A stretch of DNA of 63,813 bases, counting the filler, from Intoshia linei (lineage: Eukaryota; Animalia; Orthonectida): assembly GCA_001642005.1 (NCBI GenBank). It is 8 parts of 8 records of this genome, joined end to end, with 100 filler letters (N's around TTAATTAATTAA, not from the genome) between each part and the next. Parts side by side here need not be neighbours in the genome. Positions count along the whole stretch, not along the records: positions 25,957 to 38,202 come from LWCA01001094.1; 7 more parts are not named here. One strand, written 5' to 3'. The position numbers were made by a program, and so were the translations under genes. The notes beneath the pieces were generated by a model that worked only from the letters and a program-made list of their open reading frames with translations, had not been told where the DNA came from and did no database searches. This document shows, piece after piece, positions 25,857-38,560 of the stretch. Within the stretch, counting starts at the first letter, position 1, and every line of letters begins with the position of its first letter.

Positions 25857-26314
25857 NNNNNNNNNNNNNNNNNNNNNNNNNNNNNNNNNNNNNNNNNNNN
25901 TTAATTAATTAANNNNNNNNNNNNNNNNNNNNNNNNNNNNNNNNNNNNNNNNNNNNGGAATGCGTAGATTTCTGAGGTTGAAATTTTGTATTTATATCAA
26001 CTGGAATAAGTTCTATCAGATTAATTTTTTTTTAATTTTTGGACCGTTAATTATTTCACATTTTTTGTTTTAAAAAATATATGAATACTAAAATTTTTTT
26101 TTGACCGTGAAGACGTCACTTATTCAAATAGAAATTTTTTGTGTGTGTTAATAGGATACAACTCTAATACCCGTAAATTTGTAAAATTAAAACACACACA
26201 AACAAATTTTGCAAATTATATTATATAAGTAAAGATAAACAAATGTATTACACCCGTATTAATAATCCATGAATAACTATATAGTGTAATATACATGTAG
26301 CCTAATAATTTTAG

Positions 26315-29300
26315 TATCCGACCTCGATTCTACAATATTCAAAATATTAGGAAAATCTAAGTTCGAAAGTAATTAATTCACATTATACCAGTAGTTCCTA
26401 ACATACATTATATGTATGCATTATACTAGTATAATATGTTATAATGTACAACAACATAAAACAGTATTGTACTTCACAATTGGTACCATAAATTTCCCCA
26501 AAAAAAATAGTTCCCTATTATAATTTCTATATACTGTAAACATAAAATCATATGAATTATAAAAATTCATTAATCATCATTAACATAAATAATTAAAAAT
26601 AAATAGTTCACGATTACTTTACACCACTACTTCACCAAAAATGGATATCTAAAAATCGTTAATTAGTGAACAATCAGACTAGAGACGTATATTCTTATAA
26701 TAACAGAGACTATTAAGTAGACCAGTGGTTTTCAAACAGTGTTCCGCGAAATTTAATTGAGGTTCCGTGAAATATAAATGCGATATTTTTCAATTTAATG
26801 TTTTTCTAAATTACTGTTGTTTTTAATTTTAATTTTACATAAATGTATTCTCTAATAAAAATTAAATATAATACCTAATATATAAAACCTTTGGAAAAAA
26901 TATCAGGCCCAAATTTCTCATTGAGAAGAAAAAATACATTTCATTATTAAAAAATTTATGTTTTCAATATTAGAAGCGTCATTTTTAATTAAAAATCAAA
27001 TTGTTTTATATATGCGACATGCGAAACAAAATTTTGGATCATGCTTTTAGGTAACGCGATTTTTTGAAATTTCATAAGGGTTCCGCGCAGTAAAAAAGGT
27101 TGAGAAACACTGAAGTAGACATTACTACAAAGTAAATACATAATGTATAAAAAATTAAAAATAGTGCATTCCACAATATAATTTCAAATTCCGACAATTT
27201 TTTATACAAATTATGGAATGTATTTAAAATAAGTTACTTATAATCTTATAATGCCTAGGGGTCCGAGTACTCATTTGGAAACCGCTGCATTATACCATGG
27301 TTCATCTGAAATGTGTCGTGTAGACTCCAATTTAAAATTTAAAAGTGACATACTTAGCAATGAATCACAGTAGTAAATGCTTTAACTTTCATTACAACTT
27401 TTAATTGACAAAAAAATTAACATTTTTCGTGGTCCCGATGATGCCTCAATAATCTCAGAATTGATAATGCATATTATGGCTATTATTATGTTAATCGCTA
27501 CATTTTAGTATTTCATGAAAATTTAATATTCAACATAAACAAAAAAAATAGATTTAAACAAATTGACCATATTTTAAATGTTGAAAACACCAGCAAAGAT
27601 ACCCAAAGATATGATTTATTAACTCTATGTAATATATAAAGGATAAAACCATAATGAACCATAAATATGTTTAGCTTACAACACCACAAAAACGTTGAAT
27701 TTGAAATATATAATAAAATGTATGTTTTATAGATACAGTATACAGTATGTATATTATCAGAGCCGAACCAATCATGCTCGAAACGCGAAAATCAAAAGGG
27801 GCCTTAAACAATTAGATTTTAACCAAAGAATGTGTAATACGGCGTCCATATAGCCTCTATCGATCTCTCCACGCCCTTTACTAGACTATGCAAAAATATG
27901 GCCTTATTTAAGTAAAAAATTAATAGAGGCCTTTCCCCTACAGATCATCGCGGGTATGGTAGATTCGGCACTGTATATTTTAATTTAGTTGTAAAATAAT
28001 AATGTAATAGACATGTGCATAAATATTGATTATACATGTAATCAAAATTAACTATACTATCAGTACATCAATATGTACTTTATATTGAAAACATAATATT
28101 AATGTATTTAGCTTTAAATTTGTTCAATATTCCTTTGGAAGATTTTAAATTATATGCCTTTATAAAATGTAAATTGTATTTAAAATTATTTATTGTACCG
28201 TTAATGTTTAATCGTTATTATTTGATAATTATCAAACACTTATAATATTAATACATATGATACGTATTATGTAAATATTGAAACTATAAAATATAAAGTA
28301 AATTACGTTATTTTACTGCAACGATTCCCACATTAAGGTTCACTAATCACAATGGCTGAGTGAAATATTAGACACGAGTCCGAAAAAAATATAAAGAAAA
28401 TTTTTGATAATGTATTATTGATATCATGTAACCTAAAATTTGGGTCCTAAATATAATAAACTTTTCATGGGACACGTAAGAAGATAATTTATATCAAATG
28501 TCCAGCCGTAAATTAAAAAGTTTGAAAATCGCTGATATGTAACTACAAATTCTACCAAGAGAGAATAATGGTTGAAGTTGCAACCACATTTAACATTAAA
28601 AAATGAACATATAGGTATGATGCTACTAATTCAATTTTTCGTTTTTAATTAATTGAAATGCTTATAATGGGAAGTTAAGAAAAATGGTTTAACCATAAAG
28701 TATTTAATTATAATTAAATATTTCTTATTGTTATTTGTTAAATATACTTTGTATAATTTTTGTTCATACATGTTCAAACAGTACATTAGGGTGTTTCCAA
28801 AATCACAAAAACAAAAATTTATCAATAAAAAACATGAGTTTTGATATAAAATTAACTTATTACCAAACCCTTTTGCTTGAATTTAAAAAAAACCTCTCCG
28901 GTTTCAATTTTAGTCAAATATTTTTTTTTCACTATTATTATATGAAAATAGTTATTTTCATTTTACAATATAAATGTAACATATGTTAATTAAAATTAAA
29001 TTATATACACCTATTCAACAATACATTTCAGTTTCAACATGAGAAGGATCTACATGTATTTCAATAGTAATGAAAATGTTCTAAGTAGAAAACTTCCAAG
29101 TAAATTATAGGGTTTAGGAAAAAAATTATGTCAAAACACAGTTCAACAATTAATACTGTATTAATACCAATTTTGACATCTATTGAGTCAGATATACAAC
29201 TATCAATCAATTTATACATTATTCGTCGTTTAAAGTGACTCGAATAATTAAAAACGGAACAAATAAGAAAATAAATATATCTATCTTGACTTTAGAAATC

Positions 29301-32300
29301 ATTATTCAATGGGAACTATTTAACATATATTTATATAATATTTAACATACCAACTATACAACAAACGTCAGTGTATAACACATCTAATGATACAATACGA
29401 CAATTCGCAGAAAAACAATACAATTTTACCTATTATGCAACATTTGTTCAATAGAGATAATATTACGAAATTCTGAACAAAAAAAGATGAAGTCTTTTTT
29501 TGATCAATGTAACTCGAATCCATCATTTTCCAATAAAATTTTTTATTTTATTCCTCATCCTGAGGACCAGTTTGGTTCAGTGTTCGATCATCGATAGATT
29601 AGAACATATTAAGAAATTATGAAAATTTATCTTCTCCAGGAATAAAAAGTATGAATAAATATAAACGACATGGTTTCGAACGTGATCCAATGACAAAAGA
29701 AGTGTCCGAAAGAATAATTTATATGCTTAATAATGAGGTAAATCATGCAAAATCAATTTCCATGTTAAATTTAAATTTAATATATAGATTTAATAAATCA
29801 TGAAATTATTGCGTTAATGATTAATATACAACTAAAACATACAACATAACCATTGGTTATGTATATACACTGCGTTCCAAGTTATTATGCAAACATTAAA
29901 AACATTAATAATTTAAAAAGTAGTTACTTAATTCTATTAATTTTGTTTTATCATATTTATATATTTAACTAATAATACTTTAACGTCCCAAGAAAAATGT
30001 AATGTATTCAAAAAAAATAAATACACGAAGATTTAAGAAAATTTTGTGATTTTTGGTGTGCCAAATTATTATGCAAATGAATATTAAATAATAATTTTTT
30101 GTTAATACGAATAAATAAATTTTTTTAAATATTTAAATAATATAGTCTATTGTAATTTAAACTAAATTCAAGCAAAAAAATGTAATTAAACTTTACATAT
30201 TAATATAGCCCACCCTTCCGGATATTACCAGAAAAAGTCTTATAGCCATGGATTTCGTGAGGTTTTCAATTGTTTTTGCATCGATTGTTTTGATTAATAT
30301 TCTTTATTCCCACTGTATATCTTTCATTTAATTATTGACCATAGATTTTCAATACAATTAAGATCGAGAGAATTTGGCGGCTAACACATTATTTTTTCTG
30401 ATCTAGCTATTTGATGAAAAATATTCTTTTGTATGACGGGATGCGGGACTTGGGGCATTATCATACATAAAAATGAAATTTTTAAGAAAACAAGAAAGAA
30501 AATAAGATAATAAGATAACAAAAATAATAGAATTAAGTGACTACTTTTTTAATTGTTAGTGTTTTTAATGTTTGCATAATACCTTGGAACGCAATTTATT
30601 GTAATTTTTTTTATAAGTCCGATAGGTAATTTCATATTTTGTAGCCCCATATATACAAACTTTAGACTGTCAAATCAATCTATATACAAAATTTCATAGT
30701 TTTAACCGATTTGGGGCATTCAAGCGTCAAACCAGAAAGGTTTTTTGTTAACCAATAAAAAGTTTTTATCAGAATGTGATTTTTAGATAATTATTTATGT
30801 TTTTTATTGATAAATCTTGGTATTTTCTAAATTCATCCTCTTTTGGAAACACCCTATTGTACATACCTATACAAGTTTAAATCAGACATGTTGCTCATTT
30901 TTGGTAAAAATAATATTTAATTAGTAAAATAATGAATTAATATAGGCAACAAAAAATTTAACTCACTCATCAACATGTATCGAATTTTCAAATGTAAATT
31001 TTAATATATAAATTAATCTATATACAATATCAATAATAAAATATCTATATCTATAATATATCATACATGTATATTAATAATTATAATTAAAATTCAAAAA
31101 TAATCATAGATTATTTAACGTTTATCAATATTACCAAAGACGAAAAATTATTATCTAAAGGTAAGTTGTTATTTAAATATTTATTATAACAGTTTTATAT
31201 ATAATTACATAACTTAACAAATTTTTTATTAGCAAAGAAACTATTTACAATAATTGAAAAATTTTTTTCGTCACTTAACGAAAATATGCTTACATTGGAA
31301 ATATTACGTAAATTTTTGATTATAAATTATAAATTTAATATCTATCGAAACTGATGTTAATATAGCTTTTAATTAAGATATTTTTAGTTAGAATAATGGA
31401 TAGTTTATGTTTTAAAGGTATTTAAATCACGTATTATTAATCACGTACACGTATAATATATGTCGTATATACAAATCCTAGTTAACGGAATTTTAACTCG
31501 AAGAAATGTGAATAAAAACACAAGTACAATGTACACAAAACTATCGGGCCTTTCACATTTTGAAAAATTTTAGTTTTTAAAACAACTATAGGGCAATTAT
31601 ATTATGTTCAATGAACCATTCTCATATAATTTAGGTAATTCAATTAAATTCAATATTGAAAAAATTTAATTTAAAACTAATTTTATACACATTGTACTGT
31701 ATTTTTACTATTGAGCCTTTAATGGTCAAAGATGGAAACCATAATTATTTTTCAATTTAGAATTAGAACATTTAGAATACAAGGACCACAACATATTTTC
31801 AAGTTAAATAAAAATTCAGCAATTAGAGAGATAAAAATAATAAAATTATAATTTAGTTATTAAAATTTTCAAATTTTACATATTTGTCGTTGGTGAGGAT
31901 AATAAAATACCTCAAAATTATGTCAGTGACTAACAAAAGCAAAACTACACAATTTTTAATCATTCATAAATATTTAAGAAATGTTTTTACACTATTTCGT
32001 ATTGGAAAAAATCCAATTCCGTTAACTAAAACTTTTAATATAGTATACAATTATATCTTGATTCATCCTATAATGCATCGTGGATTTAATTCTATAAATT
32101 TAGATATTTTTGAAATGTTTTTTGATTTTATCAAAAATTTGATACATCATATAAATAAACGTAATATTATAATAAAATATATTTCAATTGTATGTGCGTG
32201 AATGGTTATCAAATATAATGATTCTATTGCTAGAATCAAAAATAATTTCGATATTTAGAGAAAAATAAAAAAGTTTAAAATTTACTTTTTGACCAATTAC

Positions 32301-35300
32301 CAATTATTAATTAGTTAATTAGTCAGAAAATTAAAAGTCTAGTTTTTCGAGATAGTATATGTAGAATCAAGACATGATTATAGTGTAGTGCTTTCAAAAT
32401 TTTCAGCCTATACGGGTCACCATGGACACACCGTCTATAATAGCGACGAATAAACTAATGGTACACATATACGAAAAAACTGATTTTGGGTCCTGTATCC
32501 ATTGATTAATCTTTAATTTAATCTAAGCAACATATTCGAAAAATATTTTTAAAACTGGGCTCCAAGGTTAAAATAAAATTTAAATTTTTAAATTCTAAAT
32601 TTTAATTGATATGATTTGGTGTCTCGGTGGGGTTGTTTATACAATGCTACTTGATATGATGTATCGAAAATTTAAATGTAAGATAATTAAGACTTTTCAC
32701 AACATTATCTATTAATTTAGAATACTAGGCACCGTAATAATTTGGGACCCTTCATATGATCCAGCCCCACTTAACGGTCCTGATCATACAATTTATATTA
32801 AAATTAGAGCGGACCTGGTATTCTTTAGAAAACGTATGCTAAACAAAAATGTGCCGTTGGTTACAGACGATTAAGATATGATGAGAAGATCATGATAAGA
32901 TTTCCCATGACGTTATTAATATGAAAATATTTCATTTAAAATTTAAAATTTAGACGTTAAATTTGATTTGAGGGGATGCAAATCCTTGAAAAAAACGTGG
33001 TCAACTACGAATAAGGCTTTATTATCATTATATTCAATTGAAATGATTAAAGGTTATTTTTTTATTCATTCAAATTAGTTCATTATACATTGTATATAAT
33101 GTATAATATATGACACAAATTTTCACATAGTGAAACATTGATTTAGGGTATCTACTTAAATCCAACCATTTTTACTAAAAATCAAAATTTACATACACTA
33201 AAAGGAAAAATCCAGTTTTACCAACCATAAAAGGAAAAATTCGGTTTTAAAAACCCTTTAGAGAAAATTTCAGTTTTATCAACCTTTAAGGGAAAAATCC
33301 AGTTTTACAGAATTGCGGCATATTTCATAAAAACTCAATATCACAAACAAAACAAAATAAAGTTCTCAAATTGTAAATTGTAAAGTAAAATTGGGATTTT
33401 TCCATTAAAGGTTGGTAAAACTGGAAGTTTCCCTAAAGGGCTTTTAAAACCGAATTTTTCCATTAAATGTTGGTAAAATTTGGATTTTTCCTTAGGGGTT
33501 TGTAAAAGTGCGTATTTAATAAAAATGGTTGGATTTTAGTAAAAATGATTGGGTTTAAGAATATTATCATTGATTTATTCAAAGTCTAAAAAAGGAATGT
33601 TTTTAAATTTAAATTTATCTGAACTGTTAGTAAAAAAATTGAAATAAAAAAAAATTATTAATTTGTAAAAAAATATATTTAATTCTGATTTTATAAGACA
33701 CTAGCTTGATTGTTATGTCGTCCGTACAAATAGAGTAGATTTGCCAATGTTCGAATTTTTAATTTTAAGACTAATTATAACAATTATAATATAGACCAGG
33801 GGTTCCCAAACTCATTTTGCCTACCGCTCTTTTATTAGCAAAATATTTTCTCAACGCCCCCTGAATTATTTTTCTACTACGTCGTATATATATTTAAAAA
33901 TTTACTCATTATTCAATATTTAATAATTAAAAAATTGTGTTAATAAAAATATAAATATATTCATTACTATCACTTTTTATATCAATGGATCTCAAAATTG
34001 CTATAAAAATATCCCCTTACAACCAAAAAATTCATCAACGCTCCACTCTATCCATCTAAAATCGTTTTTGGGTATACAGTGTTTTTATAATCGCCCACTT
34101 TGGCAACCCCTTATATAGACAATGAATGTATAATCTTAAAAACACTCCAATTATAGTTAAAACCTAAAAAATCGTCATAAATAACATGAATTCCAGAAAA
34201 AATAAAATTTTAAATACCTGTAGAGTCTAGATAAGTTGTTCAAATAATGCACAGCTTCTAATTTTACCACTCTTTAGTAGAAAAAATTAATAAGTTACCC
34301 TCTGCGGTTATCTTAGGTATCTTAAATTAGAGTTTTATCAGCATTCAAAACAAAAACATTTATTGACCATTCTTATTTTGTTTTGATAAAATATCTGTTA
34401 TTACTGATTAGCCTAATACCTCACTAAATATAGCCCAAATTTGTACTTGACCCGACTATGATGTGTTCATATAGACCCTATGTTAAGGATCAGTCGGAGA
34501 ATAATCGAATCTACCGTTACCAAGATACCCAGAATTTCTGATAGTTTCACTTGTGAAATTACGAATTCCTTACTGGAATTTCCTAAATATAAACCTTTTA
34601 ATATTAATAATTTTAAAAATTAGTGCTAAAATTCGAAATAGTATTAGACCATTTATCATTATGGGAAGACGTGGATTCATTCATAAAGCATTACGATTCT
34701 ACTAGAAAAAACTTGAATTTTTACCCATTTCTTGACATACTCTACAAAAACTTTGAAAAACAAGTAAATAAAATGGTAGAAAGTGTACACGACAGTTTAA
34801 CAATAAAATGTGTAATAAAATTGGTACTACACCAAATAAACCATCTTCAAATGTTTATAAAATATCAAATAAGTAAAGTATCTCATCATAATTATATGGA
34901 AAAATATGATAAAATGTTTCGATTGCTAAATGACTCGGAACGATATTGTAATCATGTATGTTTAAATGAAATGGATAATATATTGAATACTAATAATATA
35001 CCAACCTTACGGAAATTACGTTTAATTGAATCTGAAGAAAAGTTTATACAAATGTACAATAAACCTAAAGAAATTAAAATAAAGAAAAATTCAAACTCCG
35101 ATAATTACGAAACACTTCCGTCTATAAATTCACATGTAACTATTCAAAATGAACGATATCTTCCATCCATACAAAATACTCTTCAATTTGATGCATTTAA
35201 ACCAAATTATACAATCACAGACTATGAAAATAGGCCAATCAATGCAATAGTAAATATTAACCCTCCATTGTCAAAATCTCTGTGTTTTATAATGAGTGTT

Positions 35301-35958
35301 TTTTTCACGTCTTTAGGCATTTTTGACATTATTGTATCCAAATATAGCATGTTTTTCCCTCAAATGATAGCTGGATTGATGGTATACATTTAATATTATA
35401 TAGTACACTTTTAGTTTCATTATTGTAAAATTATACTTTATAGTTTATTATTATGGGCATCAATTCTGCTATATTCAATTATGAACATTATTTAAAATCT
35501 AATAAATATAAGGTAATTTATTATGTTTAATTTTTAGTATATCCTTTTTTAGATTATATTGTATATTATTTATATATTCTTGACAATAATAATCATTTTA
35601 TTTGGAATATTCTATTATATGTGTAAATTTTGTCTTTTATATCAAATTTATCTACCATTCAATGTTTATGTTCAAATAAATTCCTTATTTTTGGATAATT
35701 ATGGGTAATTTTTGACGTATTACATTTAATTTACATTATTTTAATAGATTTAAAGAAAATTTCGATTATACTTATGAAATTACCTCTTGTGTCGCCAATT
35801 GCACTCTTTTAATATGCACATTGGGGATTTTGCTTTCTTTAGATAAATGTGTTAAAATACTAAAAAAACAAATTTTTTCATTTCGAACTGTAATAGTTTA
35901 TCTTAGATTTGTTAAATCAGGGTTAAATCAATTTGATATGTCAATGGTCACAAAATGA
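26315..35958 (+). CDS. Uncharacterised gene: 12 symmetric phase-1 mini-exons, a large exon and a 4-TM (MS4A/CD20-like topology) C-terminus; 5' end missing
   Basis: Exons 26315-26368, 27509-27628, 27675-27719, 28112-28168, 30946-30993, 31110-31160, 31233-31307, 31388-31417, 31761-31802, 32104-32160, 32954-33052 and 34278-34316 are all AG/GT-bounded and open in phase 1. They are followed by 34624-35381, 35444-35512, 35553-35704 and about 35748-35958, encoding four hydrophobic helices. Confidence 0.6.
26723..27112. mobile_element. hAT MITE
   Basis: TIR CAGTGGTTTTCAAAC / GTTGAGAAACACTG; perfect 8-bp TSD AAGTAGAC. Confidence 0.85.
27758..27973. mobile_element. hAT MITE
   Basis: CAGAGCCGAA / TTCGGCACTG ends; TSD TATATTAT / TATATTTT. 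Confidence 0.65.
28787..30856. mobile_element. hATm-like TIR element containing a nested Tc1
   Basis: 16-bp perfect TIR TAGGGTGTTTCCAAAA, subterminal inverted similarity, and TSD-like CAGTACAT / TTGTACAT. Confidence 0.7.
29868..30596 (-). mobile_element. Tc1 (DD34E) deleted element
   Basis: TIR CACTGCGTTCCAAGTTATTATGCAAAC with TA flanks. Remnant YDNAPSP..HT...PPNSLDLNCIENLWS. A further TIR copy lies at 37631. Confidence 0.85.
33146..33568. mobile_element. MULE/foldback-type MITE
   Basis: 9-bp TSD ATTGATTTA; inner TIR TTAAATCCAACCATTTTTACTAAAA; ~30-bp subrepeats. Confidence 0.8.
33797..34112. mobile_element. hAT MITE
   Basis: CAGGGGTTCCCAAA / TTTGGCAACCCCTT ends; perfect TSD ATATAGAC. Confidence 0.8.
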
Positions 35959-36565
35959 AAAAAAAGTACAAATATATTTTTTGGTGTTTACCGATATTTT
36001 GACTTTATTTGATTATTATTTGATTTGAAACACTTTTTTAACCGATGCATTACACCCACTAGCCTTAATAGTGTAAGGTGACGTTGACAGATATTGCTAC
36101 CGTCATTAAATGTATACTATTTATTTATGATAATTAATAACCCATTAATAATTTAGATCGAAATTTCTCTATTACTCACCTTTGTGTATACTTTCCCGGT
36201 AATAGCAGTTGATTATAGCACATCTAGGCATATGTTTCTTTTTTCATTAATAGCAAATATACTGGTAAAATTATAACTTATAATAATTTTATAACTTATA
36301 ATTATACCTTTAGTAATAATTTTTCATTTTTATTATTAGCAATTACCATCATATGTTGTACTCACCATGCATAAACACAAGAAAAGCTTATTCTGGGTAT
36401 AATATATTGTAATTATAGTCTAACCGTCAATAATTATTTAAAAAAAATAAAATAATATAATTAATAATTATAATTGATTTCGATTATAAAACTGTACAAC
36501 ATTTTGCAATTCTTTGACAACCATCTAACTAATTTTCATCCGAAAATAAAGAGAGATATAATAAA

Positions 36566-37133
36566 GACAATATTCTTAAACCCAACCATTTTTACTAAAA
36601 TCCAACCATTATTACTAAAATTCAACCATTTTTACTAAAAATCCACTAAAAATAAAAGTACCTATCCTTAAGGGAAAAATCCAGTACTATCAAGCCGTAA
36701 GGTATTAACTTACTTTTACAAACCCTAAAACGAAAAATCCGATTTTACTAACCCTAAAAGGTTAAAACCTTCACTGCATTTTTCCTTTTAGTTTTGGTAA
36801 AAGTGGAATTTTGCCTAAAGGGTTGATAAGACTAATTTATTCACTGAAGGGTTGGTAAAAGTAGAATTTTACTTCAATGTTTGGTAAAACTGATTTTTTC
36901 ATTTTAAGGTAGGTAAAACTGGAATTTTCCCTAAATTTTTAGTAAACTGATTTTTTAATTTTATGGTTGGTAAAAGTGGAATTTTTCTTCAATGTTTGGT
37001 AAAACTGATTTTTTAATTTTAAGGTTGGTAAAGGTTGAATTTTGCCTAAAGGGTTGGTAGAACTGATTTTTTTATTTTATGGTTTAGTAAATTTTGATTT
37101 TTAGTAAAAATGATTGGATTTAAGTAGACACCC
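36566..37133. mobile_element. MULE/foldback-type MITE
   Basis: Perfect 9-bp TSD TATAATAAA; same family as 33146. Confidence 0.8.
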
Positions 37134-38560
37134 TATAATAAATACTACTATTATTATTATTGTAGATATTACGAAAATTTTTTGGCATAAATGTTGTTTT
37201 AAAAAACTGTAAATCTTTTTTATATATTTAAATATTTTTATTTCATATATACCAGGAGGCCCAACCTTTTTTTGATGCGATCCACTTTAAAATTTTTTAA
37301 TAAGTGACGATCGACTAATATATTAACCAGAAAAATGTTGCTGATCGGAACCTAGGTTAAAAATTAAAAATTATGATTGTAGAAAATATATAAATTAAAA
37401 TTAGGAATAATTCGAAGCACTTTCGTTTTATATTTGACAATTATCTGCAAAACCTAGTATAAGAAATAGAGGACTAACCGAAACCTTATAATTGAGTGTA
37501 GCAAGTATAACATTTAATAATATTGCTAGAGAATGGGTTAAATAAGTAAAGTTCCGGCACCCACTCCACATATAATAAACTACTTTTTATTAATATATAA
37601 ATACAATTAAATTTTATAAATATTAATATACACTGCGTTCCAAGTTATTATGCAAACATTAAAAACATTAATAATTTAAAAAGTAATCACTTAATTCTAT
37701 TAATTTTTTTATCATTATTTAATCATTTACTATATACAATTTTATTGTTACAAAAAAAATGGTTATAATAATAATTATAAATATGATTAATTTAGAATCC
37801 AAATTTTAGATAATACCATCCACAATTTTAATATTTATTTGTATATTGTAATAGATTAGGGGTGGAAAACTTTTACATCTCGATCCTTTTTTATATCAAT
37901 AAATTATAAGGGTCCATTTTTGAAAATTCAGTTTCAAAATAATTATGATCAATTAATTGTAGTAGAGAATGTTTAAAGCGGTGTTTAAAAGTTGAAAAGT
38001 TGAAAAATAAATATTTTACATATTTTCTCAAAGGGTCATAAAAATTAATCTTTGGATCAATGGTTGCAAACTCCCGTAATAGATGTTATATTTATATTAT
38101 ATCTATTTGTGTGTCCGTCTGAACTAATTTGATTACCCCTGCTCTAGATTGAAAAAACGCTTGATATTGTGTATTAATAAATTAATATTAATATATAATA
38201 TANNNNNNNNNNNNNNNNNNNNNNNNNNNNNNNNNNNNNNNNNNNNTTAATTAATTAANNNNNNNNNNNNNNNNNNNNNNNNNNNNNNNNNNNNNNNNNN
38301 NNATATAAATTACCTGGTGAAAAAAATGTAGGAACCTCTGATTTAACTATTTTAGAGTCTTAACTATTAAGTTTTTTTAATAGATTGTGTTAACATTGTG
38401 TTAATACATATCGTGTATAAATTTCTTATTTTTTTATAATATTTTTAGTTTTTTATTACTATACCCTTGCAACCCTTGGAAAAAGGAACCACTTTTTGCC
38501 AAAGGTGAATACGGAACTCATAGTTTATGTAATAGTATTAATTATATTTTGGTTTTACTA

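What the first reader, a model, noticed from the sequence alone, without database searches (positions are those of the whole stretch)
26315..35958. Micro-exon-gene-like locus: 12 symmetric phase-1 exons upstream of a 4-TM anchor
Seen: twelve consecutive AG/GT-bounded exons of 54, 120, 45, 57, 48, 51, 75, 30, 42, 57, 99 and 39 nt. Every one is a multiple of 3, open in phase 1-1, and joins the next without a stop; the chain ends in phase with the 758-nt exon at 34624 and a four-helix membrane C-terminus. Most have strong donors (gtaatt, gtaata, gtaaat, gtaagt, gtatgt). The housekeeping genes nearby have mixed phases. Known: schistosome micro-exon genes use symmetric exons to diversify secreted/surface proteins by exon skipping. 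Inference: this may be an independent combinatorial-splicing system in a parasite-like animal, invisible to the ORF track. Caveat: some short exons could be chance AG..GT pairs in AT-rich DNA, and no protein family was recognised.
Basis: partly seen in the sequence, partly recalled or inferred. Interest (0 to 1): 0.8.

Follow-up and report, generated by a model that had tools for sequence, protein, structure and literature searches.

The report
Phase-1 short-exon array, orthonectid orphan gene
On a contig of the parasitic orthonectid worm Intoshia linei, a gene with no known relatives that ends in a four-helix membrane anchor is probably preceded by about a dozen short exons that all keep the same reading phase, most of them absent from the public annotation; whether they are spliced, or skipped in combinations, is untested.

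Summary
The piece is the whole 12,246-bp contig LWCA01001094.1 of Intoshia linei. Its one annotated gene is the hypothetical protein OAF65933.1 (506 aa, partial).

With any AG/GT pair such chains are trivial: shuffles give about 28 exons. With consensus-like sites (YAG acceptor, GTAA/GTAT donor) the + strand upstream of 34624 holds 24 open phase-1-1 candidates. The other phases and the other strand hold 5-9, and shuffles give about 9.

Four further results point the same way:
- The candidates cluster with short introns typical of this species.
- Their composition in frame matches the confident coding sequence.
- Their acceptors have T-richer tracts than other YAG sites.
- No pairwise junction between them creates a stop codon.

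So an array of short symmetric phase-1 exons is probably real. One lies in a transposon end, and two have weak donors. GenBank uses only two of the twelve, and its first two exons sit inside transposons.

This is not a schistosome-type micro-exon gene: the exons are 30-120 nt, there is no signal peptide and there is no homology. No RNA data could be reached, so splicing and exon skipping remain unproven. No relatives were found for the protein.

The parts
26243..26255 (+). Candidate first coding exon: ATG, 13 nt, phase-1 donor gtatta, 59-nt intron to 26315
   Evidence: Sequence reading. The intron length fits the I. linei median of 57 bp (PMC6543705). Inferred, not significant on its own.
26315..26368 (+). 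Short exon candidate, 54 nt, phase 1-1 (reader exon 1)
   Evidence: ttttag acceptor, gtaatt donor, D+E rich.
27509..27628 (+). Short exon candidate, 120 nt, phase 1-1 (reader exon 2)
   Evidence: A 46-nt intron links it to the next exon.
27675..27719 (+). Short exon candidate, 45 nt, phase 1-1 (reader exon 3); alternative donor after 27737
28112..28168 (+). Short exon candidate, 57 nt, phase 1-1 (reader exon 4); alternative acceptor at 28064
28790..28837 (+). Reader exon 5, rejected: lies in the left terminal repeat of a transposon and has a weak gttttg donor
28781..30862 (.). Non-autonomous DNA transposon (hAT-like by its ends and flanking near-duplicate; class inferred), about 135-nt terminal inverted repeats. 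Holds GenBank exons 1 and 2.
   Evidence: blastn of the piece against itself: 28781-28904 matches 30862-30729, 70% identity, E 7e-11.
29863..30609 (.). Nested Tc1/mariner-like deleted element with about 100-nt terminal inverted repeats. GenBank exon 2 (30209-30314) is antisense to its transposase-like remnant.
   Evidence: The Tc1 class rests on my reading of motifs. Pfam and PDB searches of the fragments found nothing.
29651..29737 (+). GenBank exon 1 (ATG, phase 0), inside the transposon; doubtful as the true start
30946..30993 (+).
   Evidence: part of the run of exons linked by short introns.
31110..31160 (+). Short exon, 51 nt, phase 1-1 (reader exon 6 = GenBank exon 3)
   Evidence: gtaagt donor.
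31233..31307 (+). Short exon candidate, 75 nt, phase 1-1 (reader exon 7); 72-nt intron before it
31388..31417 (+). Short exon candidate, 30 nt, phase 1-1 (reader exon 8); 80-nt intron before it
31482..31523 (+). Short exon candidate, 42 nt, phase 1-1 (reader exon 9); weak gtacaa donor. If read through, it meets a stop at 31571-31573.
   Evidence: sequence reading.
31927..31998 (+). Short exon candidate, 72 nt, phase 1-1, within a 114-codon stop-free stretch. An in-frame ATG at 31920 is an alternative start.
32044..32160 (+). Short exon candidate, 117 nt, phase 1-1. Contains reader exon 10 (32104-32160); gtaata donor.
32444..32494 (+).
32729..32833 (+).
32954..33052 (+). Short exon, 99 nt, phase 1-1 (reader exon 11 = GenBank exon 4); weak gttatt donor
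33137..33571 (.). Foldback element with about 150-nt arms built of 29/58-nt repeats, in the intron. Covers the alternative 99-nt candidate 33274-33372.
34278..34316 (+). Short exon candidate, 39 nt, phase 1-1 (reader exon 12)
34624..35381 (+). Large exon, 758 nt, phase 1 to 0. Lies in a 258-codon stop-free stretch and encodes a helical region and the first TM helix.
   Evidence: P about 4e-10 for such a stretch. 100% match to P0001 residues 116-367.
35444..35512 (+). Exon, 69 nt, phase 0-0; completes TM2. 62-nt intron before it.
35553..35704 (+). Exon, 152 nt, phase 0 to 2; TM3. 40-nt intron before it.
35748..35958 (+). GenBank instead splices after 35889 to 36340-36393 and calls the gene 3'-partial.
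36556..37143 (.). Second copy of the foldback element, downstream of the gene

Best explanation
One lineage-specific gene of Intoshia linei (GenBank locus A3Q56_06356) fills most of this contig.

Shown:
- Its 3' half is a 758-nt exon plus three short exons, separated by 40-62-nt introns.
- That half encodes a helix-rich region followed by four membrane-spanning segments.

Inferred from statistics:
- Its 5' half is a string of roughly 10-14 short exons of 30-120 nt. Every one is a multiple of three and sits in phase 1.
- They run from a possible ATG exon at 26243 to the phase-1 acceptor at 34624.
- They are spread over 8 kb because transposons (28781-30862, 33137-33571 and probably smaller ones) have inflated some introns. 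Other introns keep the 45-126-nt size normal for this species.

The uniform phase has a simple logic. Any exon lying between a phase-1 donor and a phase-1 acceptor must be 1-1 and open to be tolerated. Such a string can therefore gain, lose or skip exons without breaking the frame.

The product would be a membrane protein of about 700 aa with a long N-terminal region and no recognisable signal peptide, so the N-terminus is probably cytosolic. It is not a secreted MEG-type peptide.

The GenBank model keeps only two of these exons and borrows its first two exons from transposon sequence.
For: Identity and annotation.

Large exon: a 258-codon open stretch has P about 4e-10. It stays open for 49 codons before the first in-frame ATG (P 0.016), and an out-of-frame ATG comes first. 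An upstream phase-1 exon is therefore required.

The array, with phase and strand fixed in advance by the 34624 acceptor:
1. There are 24 consensus-site phase-1-1 candidates, against 5-9 in five natural control cells and 9.2-9.6 in shuffles. No local shuffle out of 400 reaches 24. The longest chain is 17 against 5.8 +/- 2.0.
2. There are 8 links by 35-130-nt introns and a run of 5 linked exons. Controls give 0-1 links and shuffles 0.6 (0 of 400 reach the observed values). The I. linei median intron is 57 bp (PMC6543705).
3. Candidates outside transposons have D+E 9.1% and G at codon position 2 of 6.4%. The confident CDS has 8.9% and 7.8%; controls have 5.6% and 11.6%. Candidates inside transposons look like controls.
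4. The T content at -8..-4 of candidate acceptors is 0.50, against 0.36 at other YAG sites and 0.60 at confident acceptors (p 0.007).
5. None of the 16 exons starts with AA, AG or GA (background 24%, P about 0.012). All 136 possible junctions are therefore stop-free.

Downstream of the gene the candidate density falls back to the null level.
Against: - No transcript evidence could be reached.
- No homologue exists to confirm any exon.
- A periodic Markov coding model trained on the confident CDS had no discriminating power, because the gene's composition is close to background.
- Each short exon is individually compatible with chance (P of being open 0.1-0.4), so which exons are real is uncertain.
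- Several inferred introns (283-750 nt after subtracting transposons) are long for a genome with a 57-bp median.
- The site criteria and intron-length windows were chosen by me after seeing the list, although the result held across seven parameter sets.
- The upstream clusters could belong to more than one gene.
Confidence: 0.6

Rival explanations
1. Chance plus selection. The upstream 'exons' are AG..GT pairs that are open by luck in AT-rich DNA. Only the GenBank structure (29651, 30209, 31110, 32954, then 34624 onward) or some other short 5' end is real.
For: Unconstrained AG/GT chains of about 28 exons arise in shuffles. Each exon is individually non-significant. The coding model was uninformative. 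GenBank uses only two of the twelve. Some candidates sit in transposons.
Against: Five tests deviate in the predicted phase and strand only. GenBank exons 1 and 2 are themselves inside a transposon. Exon 2 is antisense to a transposase-like remnant.
Confidence: 0.22
2. The exons are real but belong to two or more separate small genes, for example 26243-28168, then 30888 or 30946-31573, then a gene starting at ATG 31920. Only the last few would feed the 34624 exon.
For: The candidates fall into three or four clusters with short internal introns, separated by long gaps. In-frame ATGs with phase-1 donors exist at 30888 and 31920. Read through its weak donor, exon 31482 meets a stop at 31571-31573.
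Against: All clusters share the one phase dictated by the 34624 acceptor. No junction between any two exons creates a stop. Transposon insertions explain the largest gap.
Confidence: 0.1
3. A true MEG-like diversification system. The symmetric exons are skipped in many combinations to vary a host-exposed protein, as in schistosome micro-exon genes.
For: The exons are symmetric. All 136 skip junctions are stop-free. The host is a parasite and the gene is a fast-evolving orphan.
Against: There are no isoform data. Exons are 30-120 nt rather than 36 nt or less. No signal peptide is seen at the candidate N-terminus. The short exons are under half of the coding sequence. No paralogues were found.
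Confidence: 0.08

Closest known systems
Schistosome micro-exon genes (MEGs; DeMarco et al. 2010, as summarised in PMC8293314)
   Same: A run of many consecutive symmetric exons (multiples of 3) in a parasite's lineage-specific gene. The run is poorly captured by gene predictors, sits among transposons, and could be skipped without frame loss.
   Different: MEG micro-exons are 36 nt or less and make up most of the coding sequence, and the products have signal peptides and are secreted. Here exons are 30-120 nt (mean about 65) and make up under half of the coding sequence. The product ends in four TM helices and has no evident signal peptide. There is no sequence homology, and no splicing data.
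GenBank model OAF65933.1 (A3Q56_06356, hypothetical protein, partial) of Intoshia linei
   Same: Same locus. It has identical exons at 31110-31160, 32954-33052, 34624-35381, 35444-35512 and 35553-35704.
   Different: It starts at 29651 with two exons inside transposon sequence. It omits at least ten consensus-site phase-1 exons. It ends 3'-partial through an extra 450-nt intron instead of the TGA at 35958.
Cassette-exon arrays of vertebrate genes such as the CD44 variable exons or the titin PEVK exons (from general knowledge, not tested here)
   Same: Strings of symmetric exons in one phase, so that any subset can be included and still give an in-frame protein.
   Different: Those arrays are documented by transcripts and often arose by exon duplication. 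Here the exons show no similarity to one another and inclusion is undocumented.

Membership tests
Schistosome micro-exon genes (MEG) | Internal exons symmetric (length a multiple of 3), removable without frame shift | tested here: met
   All candidates are multiples of 3 and phase 1-1. None of 136 junctions creates a stop codon.
Schistosome micro-exon genes (MEG) | Micro-exons of 36 bp or less that make up most of the coding sequence (PMC8293314) | tested here: not met
   Exon lengths are 30-120 nt and only one is 36 nt or less. The short exons would total about 1.0 kb, against 1.19 kb in the four 3' exons.
Schistosome micro-exon genes (MEG) | N-terminal signal peptide and a secreted or host-exposed product | tested here: not met
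   The candidate start exon at 26243 plus exon 26315 encode a polar N-terminus. The only strong hydrophobic segments are the four C-terminal ones, plus one in the transposon-derived GenBank exon 2. The true N-terminus is not established, so this is provisional.
Schistosome micro-exon genes (MEG) | Protein variation by alternative exon skipping seen in transcripts | not testable with these tools
   No I. linei transcript data are reachable. The protein collections hold only the GenBank model.
Schistosome micro-exon genes (MEG) | Sequence relationship to a MEG family, or paralogous family members in the genome | tested here: not met
   HMMER against 1.84 billion representatives finds only the protein itself and a spurious bacterial repeat protein. 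Word searches find only the protein itself or nothing.
Any curated protein family (Pfam-A), including 4-TM families | Match at or above the family's gathering score | tested here: not met
   There were only sub-threshold hits: DUF7200 at 13 bits, DUF308 at 12.7 bits and COX7a at 12.5 bits.

The most novel reading that the evidence does not exclude
An orthonectid has independently evolved a MEG-like gene. A string of a dozen or more symmetric phase-1 short exons is skipped in combinations, varying the N-terminal region of a lineage-specific four-pass membrane protein. Gene predictors miss most such genes, so they could be more widespread in the I. linei genome.
Probability: 0.12. Interest if true: 0.8.

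Novelty: new variant of a known kind. Interest (0 to 1): 0.5.

Why it matters
Orthonectids have among the most reduced animal genomes, with a median intron of 57 bp and about 5 introns per gene. A gene with 15 or more introns, of which all the upstream ones are in phase 1, would be an outlier there.

If transcripts confirm it, three things follow:
- Current I. linei gene models miss short-exon genes.
- Symmetric-exon arrays arise outside flatworms.
- There would be a tractable case for asking why such arrays form: by exonisation inside a phase-1 intron, or by selection for skippable exons in a parasite.

If transcripts refute it, the case still shows how strongly phase-specific statistics can mislead in 24% GC DNA.

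Tried and rejected
- **Coding-potential model.** A 3-periodic Markov model trained on the 371 confident codons gave cross-validated positives that were indistinguishable from null segments. I dropped it in favour of simpler composition measures.
- **My first verdict.** I first judged the chain pure chance, from the unconstrained AG/GT shuffle. I revised this after the consensus-site tests.
- **Homology and family searches.** None gave a usable hit: Pfam on the large exon, on other open stretches and on P0001; word search; HMMER over 1.84 billion representatives; ESM Atlas; Rfam. The one extra HMMER hit, P0002, is a 3,569-aa repeat protein from metagenome assemblies, presumably bacterial. It matches through summed weak repeats and I judged it spurious.
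- **Structure.** The AlphaFold2 model of P0001 without an alignment had mean pLDDT 41.7. That is too poor for a fold search, so none was run.
- **Tc1 class of the nested element.** I tried to confirm it with Pfam and PDB searches of the two stop-free transposase-like fragments. There were no hits, so the class rests on the terminal repeats and on motifs I recognise.
- **Exon duplication as origin.** Peptide all-against-all comparison gave a mean z of 0.05, so there is no sign of duplication.
- **Small MITE candidates.** Those at 26723-27112, 27755-27977 and 33798-34111 have only 13-21-nt imperfect terminal repeats. I treat them as possible, not shown.
- **Other dead ends.** The genome paper (Mikhailov et al. 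2016) is not in the library.
- **Joined model.** The joined spliced model was never sent to any search or folding tool. Exons were searched singly by reference, and only GenBank's own protein P0001 was used by id. Joins were made inside scripts only to count stops and to compare with P0001.
Full report
**What the piece is.** Window 25957-38202 is 24% GC. It is identical to the complete 12,246-bp contig LWCA01001094.1 of assembly GCA_001642005.1, from the orthonectid parasite Intoshia linei. It is not human. The only annotated gene is OAF65933.1, 'hypothetical protein A3Q56_06356, partial', 506 aa (P0001), spanning window 29651-36393.

I mapped P0001 back onto the DNA, correcting the last two boundaries by eye. 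Its exons are 29651-29737, 30209-30314, 31110-31160, 32954-33052, 34624-35381, 35444-35512, 35553-35704, 35748-35889 and 36340-36393.

**Checking the observation.** They have AG before and GT after, and are open with two leading bases, which is phase 1. Joined to the 758-nt exon they read 491 codons without a stop. The 3' part ends at TGA 35956-35958 and carries four hydrophobic segments. The chain as written has no initiator codon.

**Chance, first pass.** With bare AG/GT the claim is empty. Dinucleotide shuffles of 26315-34623 allow chains of 28 +/- 3.7 symmetric open exons in any phase, and the reverse strand gives 24-34.

**Chance, second pass.** The phase-1 acceptor at 34624 fixes the phase and strand to test in advance. 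I then required a YAG acceptor and a GTAA/GTAT donor.

| Set | Open phase-1-1 candidates of 30-150 nt |
|---|---|
| + strand, 25970-34623 | 24 |
| + strand, phases 0-0 and 2-2 | 5 and 7 |
| minus strand, three symmetric cells | 9, 5, 8 |
| dinucleotide shuffles | 9.2 +/- 3.8 (maximum 19 of 200) |
| local 300-nt shuffles | 9.6 (0 of 400 reach 24) |

The longest non-overlapping chain is 17, against 5.8 +/- 2.0 in shuffles, with a maximum of 12. The result held across seven parameter sets. Downstream of the gene the density returns to null.

**Four further tests, none used in selecting the candidates.**
- *Short-intron links.* I. linei introns have a median of 57 bp (PMC6543705). The three confident introns here are 62, 40 and 43 nt. 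Among the phase-1-1 candidates there are 8 links by 35-130-nt introns and a run of five linked exons (30787, 30946, 31110, 31233, 31388). The five natural control cells give 0-1 links, and shuffles give 0.6 (0 of 400 reach the observed values).
- *Composition in frame.* Candidates outside the well-supported transposons have D+E 9.1% and G at codon position 2 of 6.4%. The confident CDS has 8.9% and 7.8%. Pooled controls have 5.6% and 11.6%. Candidates inside transposons have D+E 3.7%.
- *Acceptor T tracts.* T content at -8..-4 is 0.50 at candidate acceptors, 0.36 at the other 151 YAG sites and 0.60 at the confident acceptors (p 0.007).
- *Junction codons.* None of the 16 exons begins with AA, AG or GA, although 24% of YAG sites are followed by one of these (P about 0.012). 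So none of the 136 possible exon-to-exon junctions creates a stop. Five of the 16 upstream exons (E0 to Eo) end in T, so only five adjacent junctions would need this property in a constitutive chain.

**An upstream exon is needed.** The 258-codon open stretch (P about 4e-10) opens six bases before the 34624 acceptor. It stays open for 49 codons before its first in-frame ATG (P 0.016), and an out-of-frame ATG comes first.

**Which exons.**
- 28790-28837 has a gttttg donor. It lies in the left terminal repeat of a 2.08-kb transposon, whose arms 28781-28904 and 30729-30862 match at E 7e-11. I reject it.
- 31482-31523 (gtacaa) and 32954-33052 (gttatt, used by GenBank) have weak donors.
- A possible start exon is 26243-26255: an ATG, a gtatta donor in phase 1 and a 59-nt intron to 26315. 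Other in-frame ATGs with phase-1 donors lie at 30888 and 31920.

**Transposons.**
- The transposon at 28781-30862 contains a nested Tc1-like deleted element at 29863-30609, with 93-101-nt arms. A third arm copy lies at 37618-37761.
- GenBank exons 1 and 2 lie inside these elements. Exon 2 is antisense to a transposase-like remnant. The Tc1 class is my reading, because Pfam and PDB searches gave no hits.
- Foldback elements made of 29/58-nt repeats lie at 33137-33571 and 36556-37143.
- Subtracting transposons shortens the two longest inferred introns considerably.

**The protein.** No relatives were found (see the list of searches under what was tried and rejected). The AlphaFold2 model of P0001 without an alignment has mean pLDDT 41.7 and is all-helical, so it is unusable for fold search. 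The short-exon peptides show no similarity to each other or to the large exon.

**How it most likely works.** I judge it about 60% likely that this is a single orphan gene. Its 5' half would be a string of about 10-14 short phase-1 exons, and its 3' half encodes a helical region and a 4-TM anchor.

The uniform phase follows from position. Between a phase-1 donor and a phase-1 acceptor, only 1-1 open exons are tolerated. Such a string can gain, lose or skip exons in frame. Because the exons are unrelated to one another and close to background in composition, exonisation within an ancestral long phase-1 intron is a plausible origin. That origin is inference only.

Whether exons are skipped in combinations is unknown. 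The stop-free junction matrix is the only hint.

**Comparison with MEGs.** The MEG definition comes from PMC8293314.
- Symmetry of the exons is met.
- Exon size of 36 nt or less, dominance of the coding sequence, a signal peptide and family homology are not met.
- Splicing variation cannot be tested here.

The locus therefore resembles a MEG in architecture only. It is not a member of that family.

**Limits.** No RNA evidence was reachable, and each exon is individually weak. I chose the site criteria and intron windows after seeing the list. The clusters could be more than one gene. The null has not been calibrated on other I. linei sequence.

Noticed in passing
window 28781-30862: A 2.08-kb non-autonomous DNA transposon with about 135-nt imperfect terminal inverted repeats that begin TAGGGTG. 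It is flanked by near-identical 8-mers (CAGTACAT / TTGTACAT), which suggests a hAT-like 8-bp target duplication. GenBank's start codon exon (29651-29737) lies inside it.
   Followed up: partly
window 29863-30609 and 37618-37761: A Tc1/mariner-like internally deleted element with about 100-nt terminal repeats. A solo third copy of the repeat lies 7 kb downstream. The minus strand at 30205-30480 reads like a frameshifted transposase C-terminus. GenBank exon 2 is antisense to it.
   Followed up: partly
window 33137-33571 and 36556-37143: Two copies of a foldback element whose arms are tandem 29/58-nt and 20-nt repeats. One copy is in the gene's intron and one is downstream.
   Followed up: partly
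window 31860-32201: The second-longest stop-free stretch on the contig, at 114 codons (about 0.07 expected per strand). It is in the same frame as the exon chain and has an ATG at 31920. The 45-nt 'intron' 31999-32043 inside it is itself open, so it could be retained.
   Followed up: partly
window 35889/35890 and 36340-36393: The GenBank model leaves the last TM exon through a gtaata donor after 35889 and adds an 18-codon exon, ending 3'-partial in mid-contig. Plain read-through instead reaches TGA at 35956-35958. Which 3' end is used is open.
   Followed up: no
window 34661-34705: A short out-of-frame ATG ORF of 14 codons lies at the start of the large exon. This makes internal initiation at the first in-frame ATG (about 34773) unlikely.
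   Followed up: no
window 34626-35886 (confident CDS): The codon-position base composition of the confident coding sequence is almost the same as the non-coding background: A 0.38-0.39 at all three positions, with only G depleted at position 2. Standard coding-potential measures therefore fail on this gene.
   Followed up: yes
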